64,000 nucleotides of DNA from positions 27,033-91,032 of the forward strand of contig NIVC01003564.1 in NCBI GenBank assembly GCA_002269645.1, given 5' to 3'. This DNA comes from Macrostomum lignano. Lineage: Eukaryota. Position 1 is the stretch's first letter, and every line of letters starts with the position of its first letter. The notes below the pieces were generated by a model. That model searched no databases. It was not told the DNA's origin and saw only the letters and a list, made by a program, of their open reading frames with translations. The translations under genes and the position numbers were made by a program. Shown one piece after another: positions 1 through 34,246 of this stretch.

Positions 1-3000
1 CCGTGGCTGTCACAGCAGGTTGGCTGCCTGTAGAGCGCAGTGAGCGGAGAGTGGCAGTGTGGCGAGTGAACACGATGGGTTGGTTTGCAACTGCTTGAAT
101 GTGTTGGTTGAGTTCGTGTGTCAGTGCTACTACTGCAATCAGTGAATGAAGCAAAGTATTCGTTGAAATGCATGCAGGCGCACCGCTATGGAGTTGATGA
201 TGGGCGGATAAAGAGAAAATTATTTTAAGGGGAAAGAGAAAGCAAGGTATAAAATAAACCGATAATTGATTTTGGCTGGCGATAAAGAAAACGAAGTTAG
301 GGCTGTCGCAGCCCATAATTCAGCTTTTATATTTTCTAACATAAACATAGGTGAAAAGGTTGGGGGGTTGGCGGAGATATATATTGAGTACATTGTGCGT
401 ACAGTGAAAATAGAGAAAATAACTTTTGGATGAAATAGGCGGCTAGCCTAGGCCAACTCATTTTTTCGACACAAGGCATTGCTTAATAATTGTTTCATAA
501 CCTCTGAGGTGGTGAGGCAGGGCAATTGCTGGGACTTGAGTTGACTGCGAAAAATCTTTATTCAAAGCAAAATGAATGCTAAAAGGTATTTCAGCCAGGT
601 CTCAAACATAGGTTGAACTTGTGAGCTCTGGAGTTGAGCTATCGAATAAAAAATTCAGCAAAGTTGACGGGGGCTTGGATTGGGGATTGCGGCATTGTGA
701 TGATGAGCGCAGCGTCACTGACCTGCTCCGACTGCCACTTGTGCGTGGCCCTCCTTGACCTTGAGCGGAGTGTCGTAGCCGCAGGAACCTTTTCTGTCGC
801 AGCCACCTTCCAGATGGAACATTTGCCCAGCAACCAGCACAGTCCAGTCAATGTCGGAGTCTGCAGCTGTCCTGCCGTTGACTTGCACCAGACTGTTGGC
901 CCAGCCTTCTGCGTAGCTGCCGGTCATTTGCCTGTCATCCTGTGTGAGGACTCGAGCGACTTCTTGCAGCCAGTCAGCCAGGTCTTGCTGACACTCTGCT
1001 CTCTGCTGGGTGAATCCCGCATCGCTGAGCAGTTGATGCAGCTTTTTGTCAGAGAGTCTGGAAGGATAGCGTGGTGGGTGGGAGAGGTTAGAGCGCATAT
1101 TTGCAGAGTAGGAGGCCAAGGAGAGTGAGACTCACATTGAGCGGCTTTGAGCGGTTGTGTGGGTCTGCTTTCGCTTTCTGGAATGTGTGAATGAAAGCGA
1201 GGTGAGGAAGTGAAGTGATAGGAAGTGGAATGGCAATTAATGGGAACTGACTCGGTGGGATTCAGCAGGCGAAGCACCTGCTGCTGGTGGAATCTCTGTG
1301 CGAGTTGCGCACAGGTGAGGCCGTGATTGTCTCGATGGTTGGCATCGGCTCCTCTGTCTATCAGAGCCTTGGCTGCTCGCACGTGACCGGCTTCACACGC
1401 TCGTGACAGAGCAGTCCGACCCTGACTGTCTTCAGCGAGCACTGACGCACCGAGATCGATGAGTTTTCGAATGAGCTCGTGATGACCTGCATCAGCTGCC
1501 AGCATGAGAGCAGTGGCTCCAGTGCTGTCTGGCAGATCGACAAGCTGTGTGCTGACTCGCTCATCATTGATCAGCGTAACAGCAAGAGCGATGTGTCTTT
1601 GAGTGATAGAGAGACGAAGCAGCGGTGTGATGTGAGCTGGCTGCATTCGATAGAGGGTGTCTGTGAGAACAGAGTTCCTGCCTTCGATGGCCATTGCTGC
1701 AGTGAAGCTGAGGATGGTGCTGTATTGGAGGAGCCAGTCGGGCTCGAGGCCGAGGGAGGCAACGGCAGGCTCATCAAGACGAGAGCAAGCTTTGAGTACG
1801 CATTGGAAGCGGAGATTTTCTCTCTGATGGGGACTAGAGAGACACGAGATAAGGAACTGGGCGATTTGAAAGTTACTATTGATTGCAGCATTTGCGGCAG
1901 CATTGATGCAGCAGGCGTCTTTTTTTGATTGGTCATTGATTAGAGGTACGAGGAACTCGACGATTTTAAAGTGACCTTGGAATGCAGCCTTTTCGGCAGC
2001 GTAGATGCAGCAGGCGTCTTTTTTTGATTGGTCATTGATTAGTGGTACGAGGAACTCGACGATTTGAAAGTGACCATATATTGCAGCCTTTTTGGCAGCC
2101 TTGATGCAGCAGGCGTCGTTATTTGATTGGTCATTGATTAGTGGTACGAGGAACTCGACGGCTTTAAAGTGACCCTTGATTGCAGCCCATTTGGCAGCCT
2201 TGATGCAGCAAGCGTCTTTTTTTGATTCGTCATTGATTAGTGGTACGAGGAACTCGACGATTTGAAAGTGACCCTTGATTGCAGCATTTTCGGCAGCCTT
2301 GATGCAGCAAGCGTCTTTATTTGATTGGTCATTGATTAGTGGTACGAGGAACTCGACGGCTTGAAAGAGACCAAGGATTGCAGCCCATTCGGCAGCCTTG
2401 ATGCAGCAAGCGTCTTTATTTGATTGATCATTGATTAGTGGTACGAGTAGCTTGACGATTTGAAAGTGACCATTCATTGCAGCCTTTTCGGCAGCCTTGA
2501 TGCAGCAAGCGTCTTTATTTGATTGGTCATTGATTAGTGGTACGAGGAACTCGACGATTTTAAAGTGACCCTTGATTGCAGCATTTTCGGCAGCCTTGAT
2601 GCAGCAGGCGTCTTTATTTGACTGGTCATTGATTAGTGGTACGAGGAACTCGACGATTTGAAAGTGACCATTCATTGCAGCCTTTTTGGCAGCCTTGATG
2701 CAGCAAGCGTCTTTATTTGATTGATCATTGATTAGTGGTACGAGGAACTCGACGGCTTTAAAGTGACCCTTGATTGCAGCCCATTTGGCAGCCTTGATGC
2801 AGCAAGCGTCTTTTTTTGATTCGTCATTGATTAGTGGTACGAGGAACTCGACGATTTGAAAGTGACCCTTGATTGCAGCATTTTCGGCAGCCTTGATGCA
2901 GCAAGCGTCTTTATTTGATTGGTCATTGATTAGTGGTACGAGGAACTCGACGATTTTAAAGTGACCCTTGATTGCAGCATTTTCGGCAGCCTTGATGCAG

Positions 3001-6000
3001 CAGGCGTCTTTATTTGACTGGTCATTGATTAGTGGTACGAGGAACTCGACGATTTGAAAGTGACCATTCATTGCAGCCTTTTCGGCAGCCTTGATGCAGC
3101 AAGCGTCTTTATTTGATTGGTCATTGATTAGTGGTACGAGGAACTCGACGGCTTTAAAGTGACCTTGGAATGCAGCCTTTTCGGCAGCGTAGATGCAGCA
3201 GGCGTCTTTTTTTGATTGGTCATTGATTAGTGGTACGAGGAACTCGACGGCTTGAAAGTGACCAAGGATTGCAGCATTTTCTGCAGCCTTGATGCAGCAA
3301 GCGTCTTTATTTGATTGATCATTGATTAGTGGTACGAGGAACTCGACGATTTTAAAGTGACCTTGGAATGCAGCCTTTTCGGCAGCGTAGATGCAGCAGG
3401 CGTCTTTTTTTGATTGGTCATTGATTAGTGGTACGAGGAACTCGACGATTTGAAAGTGACCCTTGATTGCAGCATTTTTGGCAGCCCTGATGCAGCAGGC
3501 GTCGTTATTTGATTGGTCATTGATTAGTGGTACGAGGAACTCGACGGCTTGAAAGTGACCAAGGATTGCAGCATTTTCTGCAGCCTTGATGCAGCAAGCG
3601 TCTTTATTTGATTGATCATTGATTAGTGGTACGAGGAACTCGACGATTTGAAAGTGACCATTCATTGCAGCCTTTTTGGCAGCCCTGATGCAGCAGGCGT
3701 CGTTATTTGATTGGTCATTGATTAGTGGTACGAGGAACTCGACGGCTTTAAAGTGACCCTTGATTGCAGCATTTTCGGCAGCCTTGATGCAGCAAGCGTC
3801 TTTATTTGATTGGTCATTGATTAGTGGTACGAGGAACTCGACGATTTTAAAGTGACCCTTGATTGCAGCATTTTCGGCAGCCTTGATGCAGCAGGCGTCT
3901 TTATTTGACTGGTCATTGATTAGTGGTACGAGGAACTCGACGATTTGAAAGTGACCATTCATTGCAGCCTTTTTGGCAGCCTTGATGCAGCAAGGGTCTT
4001 TATTTGATTGGTCATTGATTAGTGGTACGAGGAACTCGACGGCTTTAAAGTGACCCTTGATTGCAGCCCATTTGGCAGCCTTGATGCAGCAAGCGTCTTT
4101 TTTTGATTCGTCATTGATTAGTGGTACGAGGAACTCGACGATTTGAAAGTGACCCTCCATTGCAGCATTTTCGGCAGCCTTGATGCAGCAAGCGTCTTTA
4201 TTTGATTGGTCATTGATTAGTGGTACGAGGAACTCGACGGCTTGAAAGAGACCAAGGATTGCAGCCCATTCGGCAGCCTTGATGCAGCAAGCGTCTTTAT
4301 TTGATTGATCATTGATTAGTGGTACGAGTAGCTTGACGATTTGAAAGTGACCATTCATTGCAGCCTTTTCGGCAGCCTTGATGCAGCAAGCGTCTTTATT
4401 TGACTGGTCATTGATTAGTTGTACGAGGAACTCGACGATTTTAAAGTGACCATTCATTGCAGCCTTTTCGGCAGCCTTGATGCAGCAGGCGTCTATATTT
4501 GATTGGTCATTGATTAGTGGTACGAGGAACTCGACGATTTGAAAGTGACCATATATTGCAGCCTTTTTAGCAGGCTTGATGCAGCAGGCGTCTTTATTTG
4601 ATTGGTCATTGATTAGTGGTACGAGGAACTCGACGATTTTAAAGTGACCCTTGATTGCAGCATTTTCGGCAGCCTTGATGCAGCAGGCGTCTTTATTTGA
4701 CTGGTCATTGATTAGTGGTACGAGGAACTCGACGATTTGAAAGTGACCATTCATTGCAGCCTTTTTGGCAGCCTTGATGCAGCAAGGGTCTTTATTTGAT
4801 TGGTCATTGATTAGTGGTACGAGGAACTCGACGGCTTTAAAGTGACCCTTGATTGCAGCCCATTTGGCAGCCTTGATGCAGCAAGCGTCTTTTTTGATTC
4901 GTCATTGATTAGTGGTACGAGGAACTCGACGATTTGAAAGTGACCCTCCATTGCAGCATTTTCGGCAGCCTTGATGCAGCAAGCGTCTTTATTTGATTGG
5001 TCATTGATTAGTGGTACGAGGAACTCGACGGCTTGAAAGAGACCAAGGATTGCAGCCCATTCGGCAGCCTTGATGCAGCAAGCGTCTTTATTTGATTGAT
5101 CATTGATTAGTGGTACGAGTAGCTTGACGATTTGAAAGTGACCATTCATTGCAGCCTTTTCGGCAGCCTTGATGCAGCAAGCGTCTTTATTTGACTGGTC
5201 ATTGATTAGTTGTACGAGGAACTCGACGATTTTAAAGTGACCATTCATTGCAGCCTTTTCGGCAGCCTTGATGCAGCAGGCGTCTATATTTGATTGGTCA
5301 TTGATTAGTGGTACGAGGAACTCGACGATTTGAAAGTGACCATATATTGCAGCCTTTTTAGCAGGCTTGATGCAGCAGGCGTCTTTATTTGACTGGTCAT
5401 TAATTAGTTGTACGAGGAACTCGACGATTTTAAAGTGACCCTTGATTGCAGCATTTTCGGCAGCCTTGATGCAGCAAGCGTCTTTATTTGATTGGTCATT
5501 GATTAGTGGTACGAGGAACTCGACGATTTTAAAGTGACCCTTGATTGCAGCATTTTCGGCAGCCTTGATGCAGCAGGCGTCTTTATAGGACTGGTCATTG
5601 ATTAGTGGTACGAGGAACTCGATGATTTTAAAGTGACCCTTGATTGCAGCATTTTCGGCAGCCTTGATGCAGCAGGCGTCTTTATTTGACTGGTCATTGA
5701 TTAGTGGTACGAGGAACTCGACAATTTTAAAGTGACCCTTGATTGCAGCATTTTTGGAAGCATTGATGCAGAATGCGTCTTTTTTTGGTTGAACATTGAT
5801 TAGTGGTACGAGGAACTCGACGGCTTGAAAGTGACCAAGGATTGCAGCACTTTCGGCAGCCTTGATGCAGCAGGCGTCTTTATTTGATTGATCATTGATT
5901 AGTGGTACGAGGAACTCGACGACTTTAAAGTGACCATTCATTGCAGCCTTTTCGGCAGCCTTGATGCAGCAGGCGTCTTTATTTGATTGGTCATTGATTA

Positions 6001-9000
6001 GTAGTACGAGGAACTCGACGATTTGAAAGTGACCATTTTTTGCAGCCTTTTTAGCAGGCTTGATGTAGCAGGCGTCTTTATTTGACTGGTCATTGATTAG
6101 TTGTACGAGGAACTCGACGATTTTAAAGTGACCCTTGATTGCAGCATTTTCGGCAGCCTTGATGCAGCAGGCGTCTTTTTTTGATTGGTCATTGATAAGT
6201 GGTACGAGGAACTCGACGGCTTGAAAGTGACCAAGGATTGCAGCATTTTCTGCAGCCTTGATGCAGCAAGCGTCTTTATTTGATTGGTCATTGATTAGTG
6301 GTACGAGGAACTGGACGATTTGAAAGTGACCATATTTTGCAGCCTTTTCAGCAGCGTTGGTGTAGCAAGCCTCTTTATTTGATTGGTAATTGATTAGTGG
6401 TAGGAGGAACTCGACGATTTTAAAGTGACCATATTTTGCAGCATTTTCGGCAGCCTTGATGCAGCAAGCGTCTTTATTTGATTGGTCATTGATTAGTGGT
6501 ACGAGGAACTCGACGATTTTAAAGTGACCCTTGATTGCAGCATTTTCGGCAGCCTTGATGCAGCAGGCGTCTTTATTTGACTGGTCATTGATTAGTGGTA
6601 CGAGGAACTCGATGATTTTAAAGTGACCCTTGATTGCAGCATTTTCGGCAGCCTTGATGCAGCAGGCGTCTTTATTTGACTGGTCATTGATTAGTGGTAC
6701 GAGGAACTCGACAATTTTAAAGTGACCCTTGATTGCAGCATTTTTGGAAGCATTGATACAGAATGCGTCTTTTTTTGGTTGATCATTGATTAGTGGTACG
6801 AGGAACTCGACGGCTTGAAAGTGACCAAGGATTGCAGCACTTTCGGCAGCCTTGATGCAGCAGGCGTCTTTATTTGATTGATCATTGATTAGTGGTACGA
6901 GGAACTCGACGACTTTAAAGTGACCATTCATTGCAGCCTTTTCGGCAGCCTTGATGCAGCAGGCGTCTTTATTTGATTGGTCATTGATTAGTAGTACGAG
7001 GAACTCGACGATTTGAAAGTGACCATTTTTTGCAGCCTTTTTAGCAGGCTTGATGTAGCAGGCGTCTTTATTTGACTGGTCATTGATTAGTTGTACGAGG
7101 AACTCGACGATTTTAAAGTGACCCTTGATTGCAGCATTTTCGGCAGCCTTGATGGAGCAGGCGTCTTTTTTTGATTGGTCATTGATAAGTGGTACGAGGA
7201 ACTCGACGGCTTGAAAGTGACCAAGGATTGCAGCATTTTCTGCAGCCTTGATGCAGCAAGCGTCTTTATTTGATTGGTCATTGATTAGTGGTACGAGGAA
7301 CTGGACGATTTGAAAGTGACCATATTTTGCAGCCTTTTCAGCAGCGTTGGTGTAGCAAGCCTCTTTATTTGATTGGTAATTGATTAGTGGTAGGAGGAAC
7401 TCGACGATTTTAAAGTGACCATATTTTGCAGCATTTTCGGCAGCCTTGATGCAGCAAGCGTCTTTATTTGATTGGTCATTGATTAGTGGTACGAGGAACT
7501 CGACGATTTTAAAGTGACCCTTGATTGCAGCATTTTCGGCAGCCTTGATGCAGCAGGCGTCTTTATGTGACTGGTCATTGATTAGTGGTACGAGGAACTC
7601 GATGATTTTAAAGTGACCCTTGATTGCAGCATTTTCGGCAGCCTTGATGCAGCAGGCGTCTTTATTTGACTGGTCATTGATTAGTGGTACGAGGAACTCG
7701 ACAATTTTAAAGTGACCCTTGATTGCAGCATTTTTGGAAGCATTGATACAGAATGCGTCTTTTTTTGGTTGATCATTGATTAGTGGTACGAGGAACTCGA
7801 CGGCTTGAAAGTGACCAAGGATTGCAGCACTTTCGGCAGCCTTGATGCAGCAGGCGTCTTTATTTGATTGATCATTGATTAGTGGTACGAGGAACTCGAC
7901 GACTTTAAAGTGACCATTCATTGCAGCCTTTTCGGCAGCCTTGATGCAGCAGGCGTCTTTATTTGATTGGTCATTGATTAGTAGTACGAGGAACTCGACG
8001 ATTTGAAAGTGACCATTTTTTGCAGCCTTTTTAGCAGGCTTGATGTAGCAGGCGTCTTTATTTGACTGGTCATTGATTAGTTGTACGAGGAACTCGACGA
8101 TTTTAAAGTGACCCTTGATTGCAGCATTTTCGGCAGCCTTGATGCAGCAGGCGTCTTTTTTTGATTGGTCATTGATAAGTGGTACGAGGAACTCGACGGC
8201 TTGAAAGTGACCAAGGATTGCAGCATTTTCTGCAGCCTTGATGCAGCAAGCGTCTTTATTTGATTGGTCATTGATTAGTGGTACGAGGAACTGGACGATT
8301 TGAAAGTGACCATATTTTGCAGCCTTTTCAGCAGCGTTGGTGTAGCAAGCCTCTTTATTTGATTGGTAATTGATTAGTGGTAGGAGGAACTCGACGATTT
8401 TAAAGTGACCATATTTTGCAGCATTTTCGGCAGCCTTGATGCAGTAGGCGTCTTTATTTAATTGGTCATTGATTAGTGGTACGAGGAACTCGAGGATTTC
8501 AAAATGACCATTCATTGCAGCAATTTCAGCAGCCCAGATGCAGCAGGCGTATTTTTTTGATTGGTCTTTGATTAGTGGCACGAGGAACTCGAAGATTTGG
8601 AAGTGACCATATTTTGCAGCCTTTTTAGCAGACTTGATGCAGCAGGCGTCTTTATTTGACTGGTCATTGATTAGTGGTACGAGGAACTCGACGATTTGAA
8701 AGTGACCCTTGATTGCAGCATTTTCGGCAGCCTTGATGCAGCAAGCGTCTTTTTTTGATTGGTCATTGATTAGTGGTACGAAAAACTCTACAATTTGAAA
8801 GTGACCATGAATTGCAGCCCTTTTTGCAGCCCAGATAAAGAAGGCATCTTTATCTGATAGGTCATTGATTAGTGGTACGAGAAGCTGGACGTCTTCAAAG
8901 CGATTATGAGATGCCGCACTTAGAGTAGCTCGGACGATCTCGTAGAAGTTGCCATGGGTTGCAGCAGTTGGCGTGTTGTTCTCGGTGGTGACAGGCTGAT

Positions 9001-9022
9001 GGCGGCTTTGATTTTGGTCCAT
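1..9022 (-). CDS. Ankyrin-repeat-array / cGAS-like (Mab-21, cGLR) nucleotidyltransferase, copy 1 (70 repeat units; 3' end off the left edge of the window)
   Basis: Exon model: 9022-1252 (one 1-bp deletion in the T-run at 4890-4895 joins ORFs 4811-9022 and 924-4754), 1177-1136 (42-nt micro-exon), 1057-723, then 27 onward off-window. Donors are GTCAGT/GTGAGT/GTCAGT, all acceptors are CAG, and phases are 2,2,1. Exon 3 encodes GSYAEG...DSDIDW (NTase motif). Three canonical ankyrins (TGATALMLAADAGH, GRTALSRACEAGH, GLTCAQLA) precede it. Positions 1-27 match the start of copy-2 exon 4. Confidence 0.85.
1920..8848 (-). repeat. Coding tandem array of 70 x 99-nt (33-aa) ankyrin-like units
   Basis: Consensus DACCIKAAENAAIKGHFKIVEFLVPLINDQSNK. 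Span is 6929 nt = 70x99 - 1. There is a 990-nt higher-order period (matching shadow ORFs at 6097, 7087, 8077) and a 792-nt period near 4.0-5.4 kb. Confidence 0.95.
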
Positions 9023-10764
9023 AGTTCTGGTGAGGGGTGTTAAGGTTAAAAAGCGGTGTTTAGTGGAAGGGAAGTGAGAGGGAGAAAGAACAAGAATGCG
9101 GGCAGGGAGGGAGAAAGATAGGAGGGAGAGAGAAGAAGAGGAGGAAGTGGGAAGGTGGGAGGAAGGTAGAAGGAGGGGAGGGAGGGAGAAGAAAGAGAGG
9201 GAGAGAGAGGGAGAAGGAGTGGACCGAAGGAGACAGAGGGGAGAGATTTAAGAAAGGGAGGGAGAGAGATAAAGAAGAAGGAGGGGAGGGAGGGAGAATG
9301 AGGGGAGGCGGAAGGAGTGTCACAGCCCTGATCACAGTAGTCAGGTCCCAGCAGAGAGTGAGTAAATCCGGAACAAAAGCCAGGCGGGAAGCAGACAGGA
9401 GGCTCTGCAGCAAGCAAACACGGTACTGTTCATACGCTCGTACGTTGCTTTGCAGTCTTAAAAATAACTTTAATCCTCTAAAAAAAAGACGGATCGTCTG
9501 TTTGGCCAAAGGCCAAAACGCCACGACCAAAAAAACATGCACTCTCTCTGGAGCAAGAGAGCGTAACTTTATATTTGAGCATCTATACCCGCACCCACAT
9601 AAAAAGGGGGTGGGTGCCGTTCACACTCAAAACAGGGGTTGGGGCTGACCAAAATACGGTAAAATCAAAATAACCAAAAATAAAAAGTAAATAAAAATCT
9701 TAGCTTGAAAACATGCGCAGAAATAACCTCTGTAATAGACAGGAGTAAACAGAAGAGAAGTTTACTTGCCAACGCACCAATAAGTATTCTTGACTGCGCA
9801 TTGGCAGGAAATCCGGGTGAAAAGGCAAATTGGATAACGGACCCTCTGCCCATAGAATTATAGATATTAACCTGGAAGGGAAGGCTTTTCTAAGCGCGAA
9901 TTTTTCGGGTGCCGGACCAGGTCGACTGCATAAAAGCGTTTTTCGTATTCTCTCCAATTTAACAAAGACGGGGGACTGTGGGGGACTATTAAAGAGTTTT
10001 CCCACAGTGGGCGCAGCTCATATCAAATGGGAAATCTATGAGAAGTGCTTGTTTAATGTACAAAGACCTATGTTTTTATACTCTCATTTAGCGGATTGAA
10101 ATATGCTGTATGATTTAATTCACTTTATGGACTGTTAGGGAATAGGGATGAAATGCATAGGGATCATTTTGACACGGGTTTCAACGTATGGTGCCCTTCA
10201 GCCCTTTTTTAGCTTTGCAAAAGAACACTGCTCAAGTGTACAGTCAGCCCTCATTTGCTTGAAAGTATAAAAGACCGCTTGTTCAAGGATGTGATTGAAG
10301 AGTTGCAAACATGGGCAACAAATGTGCTGCAATCAACTGTCGTTGTGGCTACTTTCGAAAAAATCACAGAAAACTCTGAAATTTTGATTTGATTTTTTTA
10401 GTTTCCCCTACACGATCCACTGCTTCTCCTTGGATCGCTGCGAGCCTGCGACGCATTCGGAGAGAAAATGACAGCCAGACAAACAATCCAGATTGTGCTC
10501 CTTGCACTTCAAGAACGATGGCTGACTTCATCGTCACGTCCCACGGCACCAATCCTCGTCGCAGGTGCAAGAGAGATAGTGAAGTGCTGTGTTAAACTTC
10601 GACTAAAAAGAGACGCAGTTCTGACTGTCTTTTCTCCACTAGAAGGACAATTTTTATGGTATCGGCACCACGTGTATGGAACTTAAGAAAAAAAATGAAA
10701 GAGAGGGAAGAGGGAGCAGAAGGGGAGGGAGAGAGGAGGGGAGGGAGAGGGAGGGAGCAGGAGG

Positions 10765-11003: not shown

Positions 11004-11170
11004 ATGTATTGTGGCATGTGCAGGTGTATTGGGATATGTGCATGTGTATTGTGGTATGTACAGGTGTATAGAGGTATGTACAGGTGTATTGGGGTATGTA
11101 TAGGTGTATTGGGGTATTGCAGGTGTATTGGAGTATGTGCAGGTGTATTGGAGTATGTGCAGGTGTATTG
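11004..11170. repeat. 20-nt minisatellite (GTGCAGGTGTATTGGGGCAT-like), array 1
   Basis: About 8 imperfect copies with a 20-nt period. Confidence 0.9.
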
Positions 11171-11174
11171 TGCA

Positions 11175-14438: not shown

Positions 14439-14957
14439 TCCGATTCCGTGATTTCTAGAAGACGCGCTTCCTGGAGGACCTCGTTATTGTTAAAGAGTTG
14501 ACTTCGTTCTTAGGGTCTTCGATTTTGATTATTGATTTCGAAGAATACACTAACGTCGGCGGATTGAATTGTTACGTTCACTAAGTGCTCTCACACTCGG
14601 CCCACTTCAGAATCCAAGAAACTCCGGAGGAATACTGCATTGAGGAGACGAGCTCTGCGGACCTGCCCGACAAAGAAGAGGAGCCCGCAAGAGTCACTGA
14701 TCACTGAATTCTGTTCCCAGGCTTGCGGTCTGGAAGTGGGAGTCCGTGCGTTTTGACACTAGACTTAATCGTCTCTCTCTCTCTTTCCCTCTCTCTAGTG
14801 TGCTAAAGCGAACTCTTCATTGGTTCGATCAAAATTATCAATAAGTTCGGAATAGCTGAAACTGAATTTGGCAACTGACATCTTCACAACTGGCACTAGT
14901 TTCATTGGAATCTGAGCACGAGTTCAGTTTTTATAGAATTATATGCATCATTTTCCC

Positions 14958-15608
14958 TCCTGCTCCTGCATTGCGGCCTGGCATTGGCGCCCTTTTCCTG
15001 CTGCCCCTGCATTGCGGCCTGGCATTGGCGCCCTTTTCCTGCTGCCCCTGCATTGCAGCCTGGCATTGGCGCCCTTTTCCTGCTGCCCCTGCATTGCGGC
15101 CTGGCATTGGCGCCCTTTTCCTGCTGCCCCTGCATTGCGGCCTGGCATTGGCGCCCTTTTCCTGCTGCCCCTGCATTGCGGCCTGGCATTGGCGCCCTTT
15201 TCCTGCTGCCCCTGCATTGCAGCCTGGCATTGGCGCCCTTTTCCTGCTGCCCCTGCATTGCGGCCTGGCATTGGCGCCCTTTTCCTGCTGCCCCTGCATT
15301 GCAGCCTGGCATTGGCGCCCTTTTCCTGCTGCCCCTGCATTGCGGCCTGGCATTGGCGCCCTTTTCCTGCTGCCCCTGCATTGCGGCCTGGCATTGGCGC
15401 CCTTTTCCTGCTGCCCCTGCATTGCGGCCTGGCATTGGCGCCCTTTTCCTGCTGCCCCTGCATTGCGGCCAGGCATTGGCGCCCTTTTCCTGCTGCCCCT
15501 GCATTGCAGCCTGGCATTGGCGCCCTTTTCCTGCTGCCCCTGCATTGCGGCCTGGCATTGGCGCCCTTTTCCTGCTGCCCCTGCATTGCGGCCAGGCATT
15601 GGCGCCCT
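14958..15608. repeat. 41-nt minisatellite (about 16 copies)
   Basis: Unit CCCTTTTCCTGCTGCCCCTGCATTGCGGCCTGGCATTGGCG; it explains the 41-aa periodic ORFs in all six frames. Confidence 0.95.
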
Positions 15609-16448
15609 TTGACAAAGGTGTTGCAAGAAAAAACATTTGAAGTACATTTTTCTTGCCTTGATCCGACATCTGGGTCCGCCTTGGCTGCTCCAGGACCTTA
15701 TCCTGCATTTCGAAGCCGGCAAGAATTTGTTCCGATGTCGCCAGCTTGGCCTCGTGCAGATCTGCCAGTCTGCCTTCCCAGACCCGGCCTCTCTTCAGTG
15801 ACGATTTCGTCCTGTCTTTTTGTGCTGTCCGAATGACTTTCCAGCTGCGGCATGAGCTCGGCTTCAGTAAGCGACTGGCGTTGAAGCTTTCTTAGAAATC
15901 GGTCTCTCTTCTCCGAAGCTGAAGCTGTTTTGCTTCAGAGCGCAGCGCTTCAGGTCCTTCAGATTTCGGTCTTCCTTGTGCAGGCGGCGGATGTGCGAGT
16001 TGACGGCCTCCCTGGTGGCCCGCCATGCACTGCAAATGCGGCACTGCTGGGAGGTCTGGGATGCCGCACTTGCGTGTGCGCTACAGTTGCTTCACAGTGA
16101 CATCAGTAGCCGGCTTCAACTCTCTGCGGCGATTTTTCAGATCCTCCATTTTTTAGCACTTTGGCCATCTTCGGACAGGCTGGCTGAGCCTCGATTGTGC
16201 GATCCCGACCGAGTCGTATGGGCAGATGTGGGACTCGCCTGCTCACTGCTTCTTGGGATCATCCTCCGCTGGCAAAGGGTTGTCCGGGGGGGGGTATTTT
16301 TGACTGGCGACACTTGCAGATACAACAGTTCAGAACAAATAACTATATGTATTCACTTTTTCGGCAAAGGTCGGATTCCAGCCAATAGAGAGCCCCACTA
16401 TAACAGAATTTTAAACAAAGCTTTTATCCTTCAGCCAGTAGTGACATG

Positions 16449-17107
16449 CGGAGAGGGAGAGGCGGGAGAGGGAGAGGCGGGAGAGGGAGAGGCGAGAGAG
16501 GGAGAGGCGAGAGAGGGTGAGGCGGGAGAGGGAGAGGCGGGAGAGGGAGAGGCGAGAGAGGGAGAGGCGGGAGAGGGAGAGGCGGGTGAGGGAGAGGCGG
16601 GAGAGGGAGAGGCGGGAGAGGGAGAGGCGGAGAGGGAGAGGCGGGAGAGGGAGAGGCGGGAGAGGGAGAGGCGGGAGAGGGAGAGGCGGGAGAGGGAGAG
16701 GCGGGAGAGGGAGAGGCGGGAGAGGGAGAGGCGGGAGAGGGAGAGTCGGGAGAGGTAGAGGCGGGAGAGGGAGAGGCGAGAGAGGGAGAGGCGAGAGAGG
16801 GTGAGGCGGGAGAGGGAGAGGCGGGAGAGGGAGAGTCGAGAGAGGGAGAGGCGGGAGAGGGAAAGACAGGAGAGGGAGAGGCGGGAGAGGGAGAGGCGGG
16901 AGAGGGAGAGGCGGGAGAGGGAAAGGCAGGAGATGGAGAGGCGGGAGAGGGAGAGGCGGGAGAGGGAGAGGCGGGAGAGGGAGAGGCGGGAGAGGGAGAG
17001 GCGGGAGAGGGAGAGGCGGGAGAGGGAGAGGCGGGAGAGGGAGAGGCGGGAGAGGGAGAGGCGGGAGAGGGAGAGGCGGGAGAGGGAGAGGCGTGAGAGG
17101 GAGAGGC
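16449..17107. repeat. 15-nt purine-rich minisatellite GGAGAGGGAGAGGCG (about 44 copies)
   Basis: Directly visible; source of the ERR- and PPL-rich ORFs. Confidence 0.95.
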
Positions 17108-17483
17108 ATCAGCATCGGTGCGGCAGTCAGCAGCTCTGATCTCCAGCTCGGCAGCAGGCAGTCAATTCCGTCAAGAAGGTGCACAGCCGCCTCCGTGTCA
17201 GCTGCAGCTGCCGCCACGAGCAGGCGGAATGCACTGCCGAAGCGGCTCTCGCTGTGGCACCCAGTGGCTGAGCATTGAATGCTGTTCGGCTTTGAGCTCC
17301 GAATAAAAGTTGGGTGGCGGATATGAGATTTTCATGAATAAGGCTCGTTGTTCATTGGTTCTAATTTCTGGTTGCGAATGATGCAGAAGAAAGAAGCTGG
17401 ATTGGAGAATTGTTCGGGTTTGAGCACTGCTTCTGAAAAGCATTCTCAGCTTTAGATTGAAGATGCGTTGCAATAGAGATATA

Positions 17484-17700
17484 GTTTCCTTAGCAACCGG
17501 ATGAGCTTGCTGATGTCCTTAGCAACCGGATAAGCTTGCTGATTTCCTTAGCAACCGGATGAGCTTGCTCATTTCCTTAGCAACCGGATGAGCTTAATGA
17601 ATGCCCTAGCAACTGGGCTTTCCCAGGAACACTCGTGGAAAATAGTTATAGTTTATGATCTAGACTATAACTAGAACCCCTTAGCAATCCCCTTAGCAAT
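17484..17700. repeat. 29-nt tandem repeat containing CCTTAGCAAC (X-box-like), followed by a 10-bp stem-loop
   Basis: Four to five units. GTTTCCTTAGCAAC at 17484-17497. TAGTTATAGT (17643-17652) and ACTATAACTA (17664-17673) form a perfect inverted repeat. Confidence 0.8.
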
Positions 17701-18561
17701 CAGTTTTGTTTTTTTCACAGCCACGATAAAAATTGAATGCCGAATTTGCTGGTTCTCTAATGAAGCTGGAGTTGATGAGGCTCTCAAAAAAATGGGATTC
17801 GATACTGACGGATTCAAAACCGGCAGTGCAGAGAGATCAGAATTCTAAATGAGTCGAGCACTCAACGCATGCCGGTTGGTGAGCATCTGAGCAGCTGCAG
17901 GCAGGCGACAGAGCCCACGTATTTTACAAGTTTTGTGCAGGTTACCATGGATTATGGGGAAATTTGCAGTTTTGTGTCCAATCGGCGTTTGCTGATTTGC
18001 AAACACCCCCTCCCCCCAAGTCAACCCCCCTCTGCACTGCACCCCTCCGCCGTGAGGTTCTTACTCAGCCTGCCTCACTCTTCTCCCCTTTTCGCACTGC
18101 ATGAGTTTTTTCGCTCGCACGGAGTGGCGCGAGTGCTGACTTGGCTGCAATTGCCGAGATTTCAATTGACCAAATGACTGCAAGGCAGCTTAGAGATCGT
18201 CTACGCGTACTGGGGCTGCCCAGTGGCCGTCGCAAGCGAGACTTCAACTGGAACGAGCCATTTTCCAATCATGCCAAGCGACATGGACGGTCAACAGCCA
18301 CTCACTCAGCACTGCAGCAGCGATGACGATGAGGAACCGCGCCGCAGGGCACCGACGATCTGAAGCTGCTTCCGGTTGATAGACGGAGAGCCCAGATCAC
18401 TGTGCTAGACAGACGGAGAAGCACAGATACAACGTATTTGAGAGCTGAGCGTATTTGAGCAAAGCAACTCAAACTACTGAAGTACAGATTGGGGAATTTT
18501 ATCATTTTTATCGCTTTCTGACCAGTACGAAAACAGCAATAATTGAAATAATTGGAGTGTA

Positions 18562-19398
18562 GCTGATGCTCATGTGGGAGCTGTCAGGCTGTCAGTCACT
18601 GAATGTTCATGAGGGAACTGTCAGTCACTGAATGCTCAAGAGTGAGCTGTCAGGCTGTCAGTCACTGAATGCTCATGAGTGAGCTGTCAGGCTGTCAGTC
18701 ACTGAATGCTCATGAGGGAACTGTCAGTCACTGAATGCTCATGAGGGAACTGTCAGTCACTGAATGCTCATGAGGGAACTGTCAGTCACTGAATGCTCAT
18801 GAGGGAACTGTCAGTCACTGAATGCTCATGAGTGAGCTGTCAGGCTGTCAGTCACTGAATGCTCATGAGGGAGCTGTCAGGCTGTCAGTCACTGAATGAG
18901 GGAGCTGTCAGGCTGTCAGTCACTGAATGCTCATGAGTGAGCTGTCAGGCTGTCAGTCACTGAATGCTCATGAGGGAGCTGTCAGGCTGTCAGTCACTGA
19001 ATGTTCATGAGGGAGCTGTCAGGCTGTCAGTCACTGAATGTTCATGAGGGAGCTGTCAGGCTGTCAGTCACTGAATGCTCATGTGGGAGCTGTCAGGCTG
19101 TCAGTCACTGAATGCTCATGAGTGAGCTGTCAGGCTGTCAGTCACTGAATGCTCATGAGGGAGCTGTCAGGCTGTCAGTCACTGAATGTTCATGAGGGAG
19201 CTGTCAGGCTGTCAGTCACTGAATGTTCATGAGGGAGCTGTCAGGCTGTCAGTCACTGAATGCTCATGTGGGAGCTGTCAGGCTGTCAGTCACTGAATGC
19301 TCATGAGGGAGCTGTCAGGCTGTCAGTCACTGAATGCTCATGAGGGAGCTGTCAGGCTGTCAGTCACTGAATGCTCATGAGGGAGCTGTCAGGCTGTC
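18562..19398. repeat. 37-nt/28-nt mixed minisatellite downstream of cGLR copy 2
   Basis: Unit GAGCTGTCAGGCTGTCAGTCACTGAATGCTCATGAGG, with a variant lacking 9 nt; roughly 24 units. Confidence 0.95.
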
Positions 19399-19696
19399 AA
19401 AAGTACCTATAAAATATCTAGCTATCTATTCTAAAAAGCATTGGCAATTGGGCATTGAAGTCCGCAGAACAAAATCGCAGAGAAAAGCCCGCATCAAAGC
19501 AGACACGCAGTTTGAACAGAAAAAGCAATTCAGCATGCAGTGCGAACTGAATTGCAGCACAAGTGTACATGAACTGGAGTTCATAGCAGAAGGGCTGCTC
19601 GCACTCGATGGCTGAAAAGGAAGGAAAATATAAAGACAATTTACAGCAAAACGGTAAAAGTACACAGTTTTTGTCTGAAATTCGAGTCCAGAAAAA

Positions 19697-22600
19697 TTAA
19701 TAAATCTGAGTAAGGAAGTCCTCAGGTCCCTGCAGTCTCATTCGAATAAGCTTGGCGTGAATCCAGCTGTCTCTCTGCTCTGCTGCTGTTTCCATGGCAA
19801 CGAGGCGACCCAAGTCGGCCCCGTCTCGCCGCAGCCTCGCCCTAGCCCACAGCCTCCGCTCCTCATCTTCCATGCTGCGGTGAGCGCCGCTGTCGCTGCC
19901 GCTGCGGTTCGAAACTCGCCACCGCTTCTGCCTGACCCAGCCGATCTTCTCCTCGTCCTGCGTCTCCATGGCGACGCGTCTCTCTTTCTCGATCATCTCC
20001 ATCTGCTGCAGGCTGAGCTCCACGTGCTCGCGGCAGTCGCTGTAGTGAGCCAGAGTGAGCAGCTCCTCCAAGTCCGGGTCTCCAAGCAGCTGTTCAATCC
20101 AATGATCGAATGCGATTGCAGGTGCGCGATTGCGGAGCAGCTCAGCTTGGAGACTCCAGCTCAGGCAGCGGAAGTTCACGTACAGGTGGGAGGAGAGAGG
20201 CTGCGACAGTCTGGCTGTGAACAGAGTCTGCGTGAACTCGGGAAGGAATGGGAAGCGAGGCGGAGAGTCGCAGGGGAGGCAGAACCTCCACGCCCAGTCT
20301 GAGTATTCTGGCAGTTTTATATCACTCAAACTCCATTTGCGACTCTCATCTCGAATATCCTGCGGCTTCAACCCTGACTCAAGCTGATGTCTCTGCAGCT
20401 CCATCGCGAGTCTCTCAGCCTCCTCAGATTCTCCGAACTTCAAATGCGTCATGGCGTCATGCACAGGGCGGCGCACTTGCACCACTGCTGCTCATGCAGG
20501 AGACTGAGCTGCCTCATCCGGGTGTTTCTGTCGCTCGATTCCGACTGCAGCTCGCTCACACACTCGTGCACCACACTGTACACATCTGCGAACTTGTAGT
20601 ACTTTTTGGGACATTCACTTCTTTCCCGGATCTTCGTGACAGCAGGCGGCGCTGTTAAAGGCAGCAGAGTGAACGGGTGAAAGTAGAACTTTTCTGACTG
20701 CAGAGGTCTCACGTGTGTTCTCAGCTGCTCGACCACTCTGTCAATGTCGCTTCTCAGCTCACGAAGTCGGTCTCGAACCCTCGACTTCGTGTTGTCGAAG
20801 TCGCCGCCGATTCCAGCGTTCTTGAAGTAGAGCGGAGCGTCGGGCATGAAGAAGTGCGGCATGCACTCATTGGGCGACCTCCTTGACCTCATAAATTTAA
20901 GCATCATGTCGAGCGACTCCTTGAGCAGAGCGATCAGATTGTGGGGCTGCCAAGCCTCAGTTTCAGGACTTTTGCCATACCTCTCCAGCATTGCGAAGAG
21001 CAGAGTCTTTGCATGGTAGGTCTTGAGTCCAGGTGTGTCCAGAGTGAGCGGCAAGTGTCTCTTGAAGATGAACTTGATGAGTGTGAACAGCTGGCCCTGG
21101 ACTGTGCTCAGCCGTCTCATGATGTCTTTCTCTTGGAAGCTGAAGCTCACTCTGAGCTCGTTGGTCGAGCTCGGTCTGGTCGCGCGAACGAGGTGAACAC
21201 AATTATCGTTTTTAATTAGTTTTCTAACTCTGCCTACACAGAAGCTGCTGCAGCAGTGAATCGCATGGCACGTGTCCTGTGCAGGCCGCACACCGCACGC
21301 CGTGGCTGTCACAGCAGGTTGGCTGCCTGTAGAGCGCAGTGAGCGGAGAGTGGCAGTGTGGCGAGTGAACAAGATGGATTGGTTTGCAACTGCTTGAATG
21401 TGTTGGTTGAGTTCGTGTGTCAGTGCTACTACTGCAATCAGTGAATGAAGCAAAGTATTCGTTGAAATGCATGCAGGCGCACCGCTATGGAGTTGATGAT
21501 GGGCGGAGAAAGAGAAAATTATTTTAGGGCAAAGAGAAAGCAAGGCATTGCTTCATAATTGTTTAATAACCTCTGAGGTGGTGAGGCAGTGCAATTGCTG
21601 GGACTTTAGTTGAGTTATTGCTTGCCAGAAATTTTATTCAAAGCGAAATGAGTCCTGAAAGGAATGTCAGCCAGGTCTCAAACTCAGGTTGAACTTGTGA
21701 GCTCTGAAGTTCAGGTATCGAATAAAAAATTCAGCAAAGTTGACGGGGGCTTGGATTGGGGATTGCGGCATTGTGATGATGAGCGCAGCGTCACTGACCT
21801 GCTCCGACTGCCACTTGTGCGTGGCCCTCCTTGACCTTGAGCGGAGTGTCGTAGCCGCAGGAACCTTTTCTGTCGCAGCCACCTTCCAGATGGAACATTT
21901 GCCCAGCAACCAGCACAGTCCAGTCAATGTCGGAGTCTGCAGCTGTCCTGCCGTTGACTTGCACCAGACTGTTTGCCCAGCCCTCTGCGTAGCTGCCGGT
22001 CATTCGCCTGTGATCCTGTGTGAGGACTCGAGCGACTTCTTGTAGCCAGTCAGCCAGGTTTTGCTGACACTTTGCTCTCTGCTGGGTGAATCCTGCATCG
22101 CTGAGCAGTTGATGCAGCTCTTTGTCAGAGAGTCTGGAAGGATAGCGTGGTGGGTGGGAGAGGTGAGAGTGCATATTTGCAGAGTGGGCCAAGGAGAATG
22201 AGACTCACATTGAGCGGCTTTGAGCGGTTGTGTGGGTGTGCTGTTGTTTTCTGGAATGTGTGAATGAAAGCGAGGTGAGGAATTGAAGTGATAGGAAGTG
22301 GAATGGCAATTAATGGGAACTGACTCGGTGGGATTCAGCAGGCGGAGCACCTGCCGCTGGTCGAATCTTTGTGCGAGTTGCGCACAGGTGAGGCCGTGAT
22401 TGTCTCGATGGTTGGCATCCGCTCCTGCATCCATCAGAGCCTTGGCTGCTCGCACGTGACCGGCTTCGCACGCTCGTGACAGAGCAGTCCGACCCTGACT
22501 GTCTTCAGCACGCACTGACGCACCGAGATCGATGAGTTTCTCAATGAGCTCGTGATGACCTGCATCAGCTGCCAGCATGAGAGCAGTGGCTCCAGTGCTG

Positions 22601-23760
22601 TCTGGCAGATCGACAAGCTGTGTGCTGACTCGCTCATGATTGATCAGCGTGACAGCAAGAGCGACGTGTCTTTGAGAGATAGAGAGACGGAGCAGCTGTG
22701 TGATGCGAGCTGGCTGCATTCGAGAGAGGGTGTCGGTGAGAACAGAGTTCCTGCCTTCGATGGCCATTGCTGCAGTGAACCTGAGGATGGTGGTGGATTG
22801 GAAGAGCCATTTGGGCTCGAGGCCGAGGGAGGCAACTGCATCTTCGCGCAGACGAGAGCAAGCTTTGAGTACGCATTGGAAGCGGAGATTTTCTCTCTGA
22901 TGGGAACTAGAGAGACACGAGATAAGGAACTGGACGATTTGAAAGTGACCATTGTCTGCAGCTTTTTCTGCAGCCTCGATGCAGAAGGCGTCTCTGTTTG
23001 ATTGGTCATTGATTAGTGGTACGAGGAACTCGACGGCTTGAAAGTGACCCATGAATGCAGCATTTTCTGCAGCCTTGATGCAGCAGGCGTCTTTATTGGA
23101 TTGGTCATTAATTAGTTGTACGAGGAACTGGACGATTTGAAAGTAACCACGGATTGCAGCCTCTTCGGCAGCCCTGATGCAGCAGGCGTCTTTATTTGAT
23201 TGGTCATTGATTAGCGGTACGAGAAACTGGACGATTTGAAAATGACCATTCATTGCAGCTTTTTCGGCAGCCTTGATGCAGCAGGCTTCTTTATTTGATT
23301 GGTCATTGATTAGTGGTACGAGGAACTCGACGGCTTGAAAGTGACCCATGAATGCAGCATTTTCTGCAGCCTTGATGCAGCAGGCGTCTTTATTGGATTG
23401 GTCATTAATTAGTTGTACGAGGAACTGGACGATTTGAAAGTAACCACGGATTGCAGCCTCTTCGGCAGCCCTGATGCAGCAGGCGTCTTTATTTGATTGG
23501 TCATTGATTAGCGGTACGAGAAACTGGACGATTTGAAAATGATCATTCATTGCAGCTTTTTCGGCAGCCTTGATGCAGCAGGCTTCTTTATTTGATTGGT
23601 CATTGATTTGTGATACGAAAAACTGGACGTCATCAAAGCGATTTTGAGATGCGGCACGTAGAGTAGCTCGGACGATGTCGCAGAAGTTTGCATGGGTTGC
23701 AGCAGTCGGCGTGATGTTGTCGGTGCTGAAGGCCTGATGGCGGCTTTGATTTTGGCCCAT
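19697..23760 (-). CDS. Ankyrin-repeat-array / cGAS-like (Mab-21, cGLR) nucleotidyltransferase, copy 2 (6 repeat units; about 1147 aa)
   Basis: Exons 23760-22325, 22250-22209, 22133-21799, 21326-19697, with one apparent 1-bp deletion near 20452 (ATG ACG [G]CC ATG). Motifs: GSYAEG...DSDIDW; a third acid in AQDTCHAI; CVHLV...ELRVSFSFQEKDIM; LKTYHAKTLLF; MPHFFMPDAPLY. These match the Mab-21 core and C-terminal helical lobe. With 1 nt restored the exons total 3444 nt = 1148 codons. Confidence 0.85.
22993..23586 (-). repeat. Coding array of 6 x 99-nt ankyrin-like units (3-unit block duplicated)
   Basis: Unit order EKAAMN / EEAAIR / ENAAFM occurs twice (297-nt period). Confidence 0.9.

Positions 23761-34205: not shown

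Positions 34206-34246
<41 letters not shown>

What the first reader, a model, noticed from the sequence alone, without database searches (positions are those of the whole stretch)
1..23760. Tandem family of ankyrin-array / cGAS-like (cGLR) fusion receptors
Seen: the ORF track splits these genes into apparently unrelated pieces. Phase-consistent splicing (two introns of about 75 nt around a 42-nt micro-exon, then a 472/695-nt intron) joins a repeat array, three canonical ankyrins, a GSxxEG...DxD nucleotidyltransferase exon and a Mab-21 C-terminal lobe. The same exon structure is present in both copies. Established: Mab-21/cGLR proteins are pattern-recognition enzymes that make cyclic dinucleotides. 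Inference: this is a lineage-specific sensor in which a large repeat module supplies or gates ligand recognition, an NLR-like sensor logic attached to a second-messenger enzyme. I cannot confirm that it is undescribed.
Basis: partly seen in the sequence, partly recalled or inferred. Interest (0 to 1): 0.92.

Follow-up and report, generated by a model that had tools for sequence, protein, structure and literature searches.

The report
Flatworm ankyrin-array cGAS-like gene cluster
The region holds two of four tandem genes of the flatworm Macrostomum lignano that join a long, variable ankyrin-repeat array to a cGAS-like enzyme; the reading is correct, but this architecture and this species' family are already listed in the 2023 cGLR survey, so these are new members of a known kind.

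Summary
All closest proteins are from Macrostomum lignano. A public gene model from a near-identical locus (P0161) uses the same junctions, micro-exon included. Copy 1 (9022 to beyond the left window edge) has the same structure and a 71-unit array of 99-bp repeats.

The enzyme half is a Mab-21/cGLR fold. Pfam Mab-21_C scores above its cut-off. A profile of the core matches cGAS and cGLR1 in the PDB. Foldseek with the AlphaFold model returns MAB21L1, cGAS and MB21D2 first. The GS, DID and downstream Asp motifs are kept in nearly all paralogs checked.

- a conserved C-terminal extension of about 245 aa with no known family;
- one homopolymer frameshift in each window copy;
- the size of the family: four tandem genes on this contig and about 158 signature copies genome-wide.

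Li et al. 2023 list ANK-cGLR fusions. They cloned paralogs about 84% identical to these genes; none is among their 15 named active enzymes. No STING was detected in the genome.

Function as a sensor enzyme remains an inference.

The parts
22325..23760 (-). Copy 2 exon 1. It starts with MGQNQS, then about seven 33-aa ankyrin-type repeats (DNA array 22925-23629), a helical linker and three canonical ankyrin repeats.
   Evidence: The ORF and splice donor CACCGA|GTCAGT are seen. Pfam Ank_2 scores 135 bits, and Ank and Ank_3 also match. The tandem array is reported. AlphaFold predicts a continuous helical solenoid with pLDDT around 90 or more.
22209..22250 (-). Copy 2 42-nt micro-exon, encoding (E)KQQHTHTTAQSRS(I), a flexible linker.
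   Evidence: It is flanked by ..cattccag| and |gtgagt and keeps the frame. The same peptide is present in public model P0161. Model residues 479-492 have pLDDT below 50. Some paralog models (P0003, P0159) skip it.
21799..22133 (-). Copy 2 NTase N-lobe exon. It carries the spine helix, the GS motif (21997-21992) and the DID motif (21931-21923).
   Evidence: The sequence is. The motifs GS[YF]AEGW (27/27) and DSDIDW (25/27) are kept in paralog loci. S-D-I-D-W is at least 90% conserved across 40 family members.
21327..21798 (-). Copy 2 intron 3 (472 nt).
   Evidence: The intron runs GT..AG. Hits from more than 90 paralogs start at query residue ~111, which is this acceptor.
20455..21326 (-). Copy 2 exon 4, first part. 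It holds the rest of the NTase core, including the candidate third catalytic Asp (21276-21274), the LRVSFSFQEK motif and the Mab-21 C-lobe (Pfam hit at about 21042-20830).
   Evidence: Pfam Mab-21_C (PF20266) scores 30.3 bits against a cut-off of 24.1. AQDTCHAI is kept in 29/30 paralogs.
19697..20454 (-). Copy 2 C-terminal extension (~245 aa). It lies in another frame because of a 1-nt deletion at about 20455/20454 relative to paralogs.
   Evidence: The frame change is shown by two tblastn segments. It also shows in comparison with P0161, P0163 and P0001, which read CMTAM(A/T)HLKFGESEE. No Pfam or PDB sequence match was found. In the model it is folded, mostly pLDDT 80-95.
1252..9022 (-). Copy 1 exon 1. 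It starts with MDQNQS, then 71 repeats of 33 aa (1852-8881), a linker and three canonical ankyrin repeats. One A7-to-A6 frameshift lies in the unit at 4921-4824.
   Evidence: Supported. A 10-unit piece of the array scores Ank_2 107 bits and Ank_4 97 bits. A 10-unit higher-order repeat is 95.6% identical.
1136..1177 (-). Copy 1 42-nt micro-exon.
   Evidence: The flanks ..cattccag| and |gtgagt were read from the sequence.
723..1057 (-). Copy 1 NTase N-lobe exon.
   Evidence: It is 95.5% identical to the P0161 exon-3 peptide.
1..27 (-). Start of copy 1 exon 4 (SQPAVTAT...). The rest lies left of the window, at contig C3564:27057-25257.
   Evidence: The acceptor ctctacag|GCAGCC is seen. The C-lobe, extension and last exon were found intact outside the window.
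9248..19696 (.). Spacer between the two genes, made of minisatellites and a short ORF with a YADD-type motif.
   Evidence: Tandem arrays lie at 13655-14439, 14952-15610, 16450-17107 and 18566-19399. The ORF at 11486-12013 has no Pfam match.

Best explanation
The region is part of a head-to-tail cluster of four Macrostomum lignano genes. Each encodes, in order:
- a solenoid of 33-aa ankyrin-type repeats;
- three canonical ankyrin repeats;
- a flexible linker;
- a cGAS-like (Mab-21/cGLR) nucleotidyltransferase core with an intact-looking GS / DxD / D site;
- a family-specific C-terminal domain of about 245 aa.

The genes belong to a lineage-specific family of about 150 or more copies arranged in tandem clusters.

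The most likely mode of action is inferred, not shown. The ankyrin solenoid would bind a ligand, probably a protein, on a variable helix face. Binding would release or assemble the cGLR core, which would then make a nucleotide second messenger. The receiver is unknown, because no STING is detectable in this genome.
For: Organism and gene model. All close proteins are from M. lignano. The splice model is open, uses GT..AG throughout and is identical to public model P0161.

Fold and family.
- Mab-21_C scores above its cut-off in the window protein and in 38/40 relatives.
- A profile of the core matches cGAS and cGLR1 at E = 3e-6 to 1e-5.
- The AlphaFold model has pLDDT 79.4 and pTM 0.81.
- Its Foldseek top hits are MAB21L1, cGAS and MB21D2, all with probability 1.0.

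Active site. GS, DID and the downstream Asp are kept in 25-29 of 27-30 paralogs. S-D-I-D-W is at least 90% conserved in 40 diverse relatives.

Repeats. The array is recognised as ankyrin and models as a solenoid that Foldseek aligns to DARPins and ankyrin. Variation sits at repeat positions spaced i, i+3, i+4, i+7, i+8. At those codons pN/pS is about 2.0, against 0.32 elsewhere.

Family.
- Four tandem genes lie on the contig.
- More than 90 near-full-length C-lobe exon hits were scored.
- A 32-nt signature has 158 genomic matches and 0 in the reversed control.
- 28 of 30 long exons are free of stops, with median dS 0.12 and dN/dS 0.70.

Literature. Li et al. 2023 classed this M. lignano family as cGLRs and listed the ANK fusions.
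Against: - No activity is known. The catalytic domains of two close paralogs were screened by Li et al. and are not among the 15 named active enzymes.
- Pfam's Mab-21 NTase model PF03281 matches none of 40 members.
- Sequence-profile matches cover only the C-lobe. The stretch around the exon 3/4 junction is modelled with pLDDT below 50. The placement of the third catalytic Asp therefore rests on motif and strand position only.
- No STING ligand-binding domain was found.
- Both window copies carry a frameshift.
- The choice of 'hypervariable' codons by their pN is circular, so the ratio of 2 overstates the case.
Confidence: 0.7

Rival explanations
1. The proteins are non-enzymatic Mab-21-fold scaffolds, like MAB21L1 or MiD49/51. 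The ankyrin array and the C-terminal domain would mediate protein-protein contacts, perhaps with ANK-caspases, and the NTase-like pocket would at most bind a nucleotide.
For: - MAB21L1 is the top Foldseek hit.
- PF03281 matches no member.
- The screened paralogs are not labelled active.
- No STING was found.
- A relative fused to ANK and a caspase (P0023) has DxN in place of DxD.
Against: - GS, DID and the downstream Asp are almost invariant across about 30 paralogs, and S-D-I-D-W is at least 90% conserved in 40 divergent relatives. That is hard to explain without catalysis or at least metal and nucleotide binding.
- Li et al. describe Mab21L1/2/3 as lacking a predicted functional active site.
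- A screen of isolated cores with nucleic-acid ligands would miss enzymes gated by an ankyrin-bound ligand.
Confidence: 0.2
2. The window copies are decaying members of a recently amplified gene family, that is, pseudogenes under relaxed constraint with no present function.
For: Each window copy has a 1-nt frameshift. Family-wide dN/dS is high at 0.70. The spacers are full of satellites.
Against: - Both frameshifts are single-base losses in homopolymer runs (A7 to A6, GG to G), which is the typical error of long-read assemblies.
- 28 of 30 sampled paralogs have 470-508-codon exons without a stop at dS of about 0.12.
- Outside the variable repeat positions pN/pS is 0.32.
- The near-identical locus on contig C1809 is intact.
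Confidence: 0.07
3. The 71-unit array of copy 1 is inflated or mis-assembled, and the real gene has a much shorter array like its annotated relatives.
For: - The array contains a 10-unit higher-order repeat at 95.6% identity, and only 40 distinct units among 70.
- Among the fetched relatives, a motif written for this repeat subtype matches at most 9 times in one protein.
Against: The units are not identical. The register is kept over 7 kb with a single indel. Annotated relatives of 2111-3379 aa exist in the same species.
Confidence: 0.15

Closest known systems
M. lignano cGLRs in the Li et al. 2023 screen: PAA68676.1 / BOX15_Mlig016402g1 (= P0163) and PAA93208.1 / BOX15_Mlig001946g3
   Same: They belong to the same family. 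P0163 is 77% identical to P0161, the near-identical public model of copy 2. It has the same order: MGQNQS start, 33-aa repeats, three ANK repeats, linker, GSYAEGW...DSDIDW core and C-terminal extension.
   Different: P0163 has only three 33-aa repeats, against 7 and 71 here. These are different loci. Only the catalytic domain was cloned in the screen, and no product was reported.
ANK-cGLR fusions of other animals, e.g. Stylophora pistillata (Li et al. 2023, Fig 1C/4C)
   Same: A cGLR NTase core is fused to ankyrin repeats proposed to mediate ligand or protein interaction.
   Different: They come from a different phylum. No array of comparable length, no ~150-copy family and no C-terminal extension is described in the text read. 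S. pistillata has seven STINGs, whereas none was detected here.
cGAS, Drosophila cGLR1 and MB21D2 (solved structures)
   Same: They share the bilobed Mab-21 fold by Foldseek, C-lobe sequence similarity, the GS loop, the DxD motif and an RxSFSxxEK-like strand.
   Different: Identity is 13-15%. The N-lobe is not alignable by sequence, and PF03281 does not match. The window proteins add an N-terminal solenoid and a C-terminal domain. The H-x3-CC-x3-C cluster sits right after the third Asp, not where I recall cGAS's zinc thumb to be (from memory, not tested).
MAB21L1 (5eom)
   Same: It is the best Foldseek match.
   Different: Li et al. state that Mab21L1/2/3 lack a predicted functional active site. 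The window proteins keep GS/DxD/D.
Fungal NLR-type receptors with highly similar internal ANK/TPR/WD repeats (from my own knowledge, not tested here)
   Same: Both have long arrays of near-identical repeats, variation focused on a few surface positions, and signs of unequal crossing-over.
   Different: No NACHT or NB-ARC domain is present. The signalling module is a nucleotidyltransferase, and the array is N-terminal.
Platyhelminth ANK-caspases (Genome Biol Evol 2024, PMC11463336)
   Same: These are ankyrin-bearing death proteases specific to flatworms. One M. lignano gene model (P0023) joins a cGLR-like core of this family, ANK repeats and a caspase domain.
   Different: The window genes have no caspase domain. 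P0023 may be a merged gene model, and its DxD motif is DxN.

Membership tests
cGLR / Mab-21 nucleotidyltransferase family | Mab-21 C-terminal HhH/H2TH-like lobe (Pfam PF20266) | tested here: met
   The score is 30.3 bits against a cut-off of 24.1 for the copy 2 exon and 27-30 bits for the spliced protein. 38 of 40 relatives match.
cGLR / Mab-21 nucleotidyltransferase family | Mab-21 NTase domain recognised by Pfam PF03281 | tested here: not met
   No hit was found in the window protein even at E up to 10, nor in any of 40 relatives at E up to 0.01. The N-lobe is too divergent for this model.
cGLR / Mab-21 nucleotidyltransferase family | Bilobed cGAS-like fold | tested here: met
   The AlphaFold model of paralog P0001 has pLDDT 79.4 and pTM 0.81. 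The first 50 Foldseek PDB hits are all MAB21L1, cGAS or MB21D2, with probability 1.0, E about 1e-6, TM about 0.5 by target length and about 380 aligned columns. The tested protein is an 83%-identical paralog, not the window protein itself.
cGLR / Mab-21 nucleotidyltransferase family | Active site: GS loop, [DE]h[DE] on the next strand, and a third acidic residue on a later strand | tested here: inconclusive
   The motifs are present and conserved (GSYAEGW, DSDIDW, AQDTCHAI). They sit at a helix start and at strand starts in the model. No residue-level structural superposition was possible, and the junction region has low pLDDT.
cGLR / Mab-21 nucleotidyltransferase family | Ligand-stimulated synthesis of a nucleotide second messenger | not testable with these tools
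   Two close paralogs were in the Li et al. screen. The column that names active enzymes is blank for them.
cGLR-STING pathway | A STING receptor encoded in the same genome | tested here: inconclusive
   The PF15009 six-frame search of the assembly gave no candidate, and the control genomes were also silent. Intron-split or very divergent genes could be missed.
Ankyrin repeat proteins | 33-residue helix-turn-helix repeats recognised by the Ank profiles and forming a solenoid | tested here: met
   A piece of the copy 1 array scores Ank_2 107 bits and Ank_4 97 bits. The three canonical repeats match Ank and Ank_3. Foldseek aligns about 500 columns to DARPin fusions and ankyrin. The TPLH motif and β-hairpin are replaced by a longer first helix.
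NLR / STAND receptors | Central NACHT or NB-ARC NTPase domain | tested here: not met
   No such Pfam domain reaches its cut-off in the window protein or in the relatives. Only a weak sub-threshold NCH2 match was seen. 'NLR-like' can describe the logic only, not membership.

The most novel reading that the evidence does not exclude
M. lignano may run a very large, diversifying repertoire of ankyrin-gated cGLR sensors that works without STING. About 150 close copies, plus dozens of older clades, carry arrays from 3 to 71 repeats that are reshaped by unequal crossing-over. Their variable helix faces would bind pathogen or self proteins. Output would go through the family-specific C-terminal domain or a new nucleotide receptor, possibly to the flatworm ANK-caspases. 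The cGLR-like / ANK / caspase gene model P0023 suggests that link.
Probability: 0.2. Interest if true: 0.8.

Novelty: new member of a known kind. Interest (0 to 1): 0.5.

Why it matters
cGLRs are a major animal family of pattern-recognition enzymes, yet the ligands of most of them are unknown. [quoted passage not shown] M. lignano is an experimentally tractable flatworm in which RNAi and transgenesis are established (from my own knowledge).

Four features are not discussed in the main text of Li et al. that I read:
- an expansion to about 150 copies in tandem clusters;
- arrays of up to 71 near-identical ankyrin units with variation on one helix face;
- a conserved extra C-terminal domain;
- no recognisable STING.

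If the proteins are active, they offer a way to ask how a non-nucleic-acid ligand can gate a cGLR, and what receives the signal when STING is absent. If they are inactive scaffolds, they show a Mab-21 fold reused in a different immune or death pathway.

Tried and rejected
- My first CDS join was off by one base. It was corrected.
- The profile of the full-length alignment against the PDB was swamped by ankyrin proteins and said nothing about the enzyme. I repeated it with a trimmed core alignment.
- Pfam PF03281 gave no hit.
- The C-terminal extension gave no Pfam family and no PDB sequence relative. Foldseek lists were filled by cGAS or ankyrin hits, so its fold could not be assigned.
- The STING searches found nothing usable.
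- My first per-codon analysis of the array was out of register after the frameshift, and its numbers are void. It was redone.
- I considered transposon-borne amplification. The spacer ORF with a YADD motif has no Pfam match, the genes sit in ordinary tandem clusters, and I found no terminal repeats framing a gene. I did not pursue this further.
- A literature search for Macrostomum together with cGLR, cGAS or STING listed no paper that mentions Macrostomum among those shown. The M. lignano entries I found are in the supplementary tables of Li et al..
Full report
**Source and layout**

The window is G000:C3564:27033-91032, from a 764-Mb assembly of 5269 contigs. Every close protein relative carries a Macrostomum lignano name, so this is the free-living flatworm.

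Two genes lie on the minus strand of window 1-23760. tblastn along the whole contig shows two more of the same kind upstream, all in the same orientation. Their starts are at contig positions 50792 (window 23760), 36054 (window 9022), 16656 and 3252.

**Gene models**

For copy 2 I joined 23760-22325, 22250-22209, 22133-21799 and 21326-20449. All three introns are GT..AG, and the product is an open 896-codon frame.

The junctions are not just plausible. The public protein P0161 (UniProt A0A1I8GUK9, 1139 aa) has the same sequence across every junction, including the 14-residue micro-exon peptide. It is encoded 100% identically at a near-identical locus on contig C1809. More than 90 paralogous exons start their match at the same acceptor, query residue ~111.

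Copy 1 has the same donors and acceptors, at 1252, 1177-1136, 1057-723 and 27, with a 695-nt third intron. Some paralog models omit the micro-exon (P0003, P0159). It may therefore be alternative. In the structure model it is a disordered linker.

In paralogs the last exon does not end after ...CAALCMT. It continues as AM(A/T)HLKFGESEE... for about 245 further residues.

In copy 2 that continuation is present at 19697-20491 but in another frame, because one G of a GG pair is missing at about 20455/20454. In copy 1 one repeat unit is 98 nt instead of 99, because an A7 run is A6.

Both defects are single-base homopolymer losses. 28 of 30 sampled paralogs have this 470-508-codon exon without any stop. 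I cannot tell assembly error from real mutation with these tools. Assembly error seems more likely to me.

Copy 1 is cut by the window edge. Its C-lobe, extension and last exon lie just outside and are intact.

**Identity of the enzyme half**

- Pfam Mab-21_C (PF20266) scores 30.3 bits against a cut-off of 24.1 on the copy 2 exon. It matches 38 of 40 relatives.
- phmmer against PDB sequences gives only cGLR1 and cGAS as weak hits.
- A profile of nine trimmed cores raises these to E = 3e-6 to 1e-5, over the C-lobe only.
- An AlphaFold model of paralog P0001 (83% identical; core plus extension) has mean pLDDT 79.4 and pTM 0.81.
- Its first 50 Foldseek PDB matches are all MAB21L1, cGAS or MB21D2. 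They have probability 1.0 and about 380 aligned columns.
- Pfam's N-terminal Mab-21 model PF03281 matches nothing.

Membership therefore rests on the C-lobe, the fold and the motifs.

**Active-site motifs**

Exon 3 carries GSYAEGW (GS at 21997-21992) and DSDIDW (DID at 21931-21923). Exon 4 carries AQDTCHAI (Asp at 21276-21274).

Among about 30 paralogous loci these read GS[YF]AEGW in 27/27, DSDIDW in 25/27 and AQDTCHAI in 29/30. S-D-I-D-W is at least 90% conserved in 40 relatives that go down to about 30% identity.

In the models the GS sits at the start of a short helix, and both acidic motifs sit at the start of β-strands. That is the expected layout of a Pol-β-type NTase. This last point is from established knowledge; I could not superpose residues. 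The stretch SQPAVTATAC at the exon 3/4 junction has pLDDT below 50, so the third Asp is the least secure assignment.

The strand LRVSFSFQEK resembles cGAS's RLSFSHIEK. That comparison is from memory. The core has a predicted pI of 8.9.

**The repeat module**

The 33-aa unit (LVPLINDQSNKDACCIKAAENAAIKGHFQIVEF) is recognised by the ankyrin profiles: Ank_2 scores 107 bits and Ank_4 97 bits on ten units.

In the full-length model of P0161 (pLDDT 83.7, pTM 0.74) each unit is a 17-18-residue helix plus a 9-10-residue helix. The units stack into a solenoid that continues through a helical linker into the three canonical repeats. Foldseek aligns about 500 columns to DARPin fusions and ankyrin.

Copy 1 has 71 units, with a 10-unit higher-order repeat at 95.6% identity. 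That points to recent unequal crossing-over, or to assembly inflation.

Across the 70 in-register units, variation is concentrated at unit positions 10, 17, 20, 21, 24, 25, 29 and 30. Five of these are spaced i, i+3, i+4, i+7, i+8 and so lie on one face of the long helix. At these eight codons pN is 0.27 against pS 0.13. At the other 25 codons pN is 0.04 against the same pS.

I chose the codon class by pN, so the ratio is inflated. The equal pS and the helical periodicity are the informative parts.

**Family size and evolution**

- The six-frame search of the assembly scored more than 90 near-full-length C-lobe exons at 78-87% identity, out of 1008 first-look candidates.
- A 32-nt signature from the extension (codons for CLSWSLQAELL) has 158 matches with at most two mismatches, and none in the reversed control.
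- The copies sit in clusters of up to four to six hits per contig.
- Among 28 intact long exons the median dN is 0.080, dS 0.116 and dN/dS 0.70.
- Divergence is patchy, with hypervariable, indel-rich patches between nearly invariant blocks.
- The exhaustive HMMER search found 180 clusters (at the 50% identity level) at E up to 1e-3, and 66 at E up to 1e-30.
- All the hits that carried a name were from M. lignano, down to 32% identity.

The family is therefore both old and recently expanded within this lineage. Array lengths differ widely between members. The motif count gives 3, 7 and 9 units in P0163, P0161 and P0017, against 71 here.

**Literature**

Li et al. 2023 (bioRxiv 10.1101/2023.02.22.529553 / PMC9980059; published in Cell) report that 87% of cGLRs are stand-alone, and that some are fused to TPR or ankyrin repeats. 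[quoted passage not shown]

- Their Table S3 lists five M. lignano proteins cloned for the biochemical screen. Numbers 92 and 93 are close paralogs of the window genes, and number 93 is P0163.
- Their Table S2 lists these accessions with Ank_2 hits.
- The column that names the 15 characterised active enzymes is blank for all five.
- The main text does not mention Macrostomum.
- I found no other paper linking Macrostomum with cGLR, cGAS or STING.

The architecture and the family are thus catalogued but not functionally described.

**Downstream partner**

A six-frame HMM search for the STING ligand-binding domain found no candidate, but its control genomes were silent too. This is weak negative evidence.

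One M. lignano gene model, P0023, joins a core of this family (with DxN instead of DxD), ankyrin repeats and a caspase domain. ANK-caspases are a known flatworm peculiarity (PMC11463336). This is a lead for the output pathway, with the caveat that P0023 could be a merged prediction.

**Verdict**

The identification as an ankyrin-array / cGLR fusion is well supported.

The 'sensor that gates a second-messenger enzyme' reading is a reasonable inference. It is backed by active-site conservation, focused repeat variation and the architecture of the family. There is no evidence here of activity, of a ligand or of a receiver.

These loci are new members of a published kind. The giant array, the scale of the expansion, the extra C-terminal domain and the apparent lack of STING are the parts worth following.

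Noticed in passing
protein P0023 (BOX15_Mlig012150g1), not in the window: This gene model joins a cGLR-like core plus extension of this family (residues 2-565; DxD reads DxN), ankyrin repeats and a caspase p20 domain (Peptidase_C14, E = 2.7e-25). It could be a Rosetta-stone hint of a link to flatworm ANK-caspases, or a merged prediction.
   Followed up: partly
window 19802-20455 region (C-terminal extension); signature TGCCTGAGCTGGAGTCTCCAAGCTGAGCTGCT: At least 100 genomic copies match this 32-nt stretch exactly, synonymous sites included, although the genes differ by about 10-15% elsewhere. Conservation along the exon is strongly mosaic. Gene conversion or a nucleotide-level constraint is possible.
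   Followed up: partly
window 23760-23743 versus 9022-9005: Copy 2, like P0161 and P0163, starts MGQNQS, which fits the N-myristoylation pattern MGxxxS (from memory). Copy 1 starts MDQNQS and would lack the glycine.
   Followed up: no
window 21274-21240 (DTCHAIHCCSSFC): An H-x3-CC-x3-C cluster follows the candidate third catalytic Asp. The CC pair is nearly invariant in the wider family. It might be a metal site, and its position differs from where I recall cGAS's zinc thumb to be.
   Followed up: no
window 13655-14439, 14952-15610, 16450-17107, 18566-19399: The spacer between the two genes holds four minisatellite arrays: 52 bp x15, 41 bp x16, 15 bp x44 and 37 bp x24.
   Followed up: no
window 11486-12013 (+): This ORF contains ...LGYADDFVIL..., which is reminiscent of a reverse-transcriptase YxDD motif. 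Pfam gave no match at E up to 0.01.
   Followed up: partly
window 32381-35446 (-): A 1021-codon open frame lies in a 68% G+C island. It is very low in complexity (poly-Q, poly-A, poly-G and long RS/SR runs) and has no Pfam family.
   Followed up: partly
window 58832-59764 (+): This open frame has an NAD-dependent epimerase/dehydratase (NmrA-like) Rossmann domain (Epimerase 44 bits, NmrA 27 bits). It is probably an exon of an ordinary housekeeping gene.
   Followed up: partly
window 38000-52000: G+C drops sharply to 27-37%, against about 50% in the gene cluster.
   Followed up: no
loci L005 (G000:C1483) and L009 (G000:C2094): In these paralogs the open frame continues past the C-terminal extension into further 33-aa ankyrin-like repeats, giving open frames of 1022 and 1157 aa. 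The cause is either C-terminal arrays or read-through into the next tandem gene.
   Followed up: no
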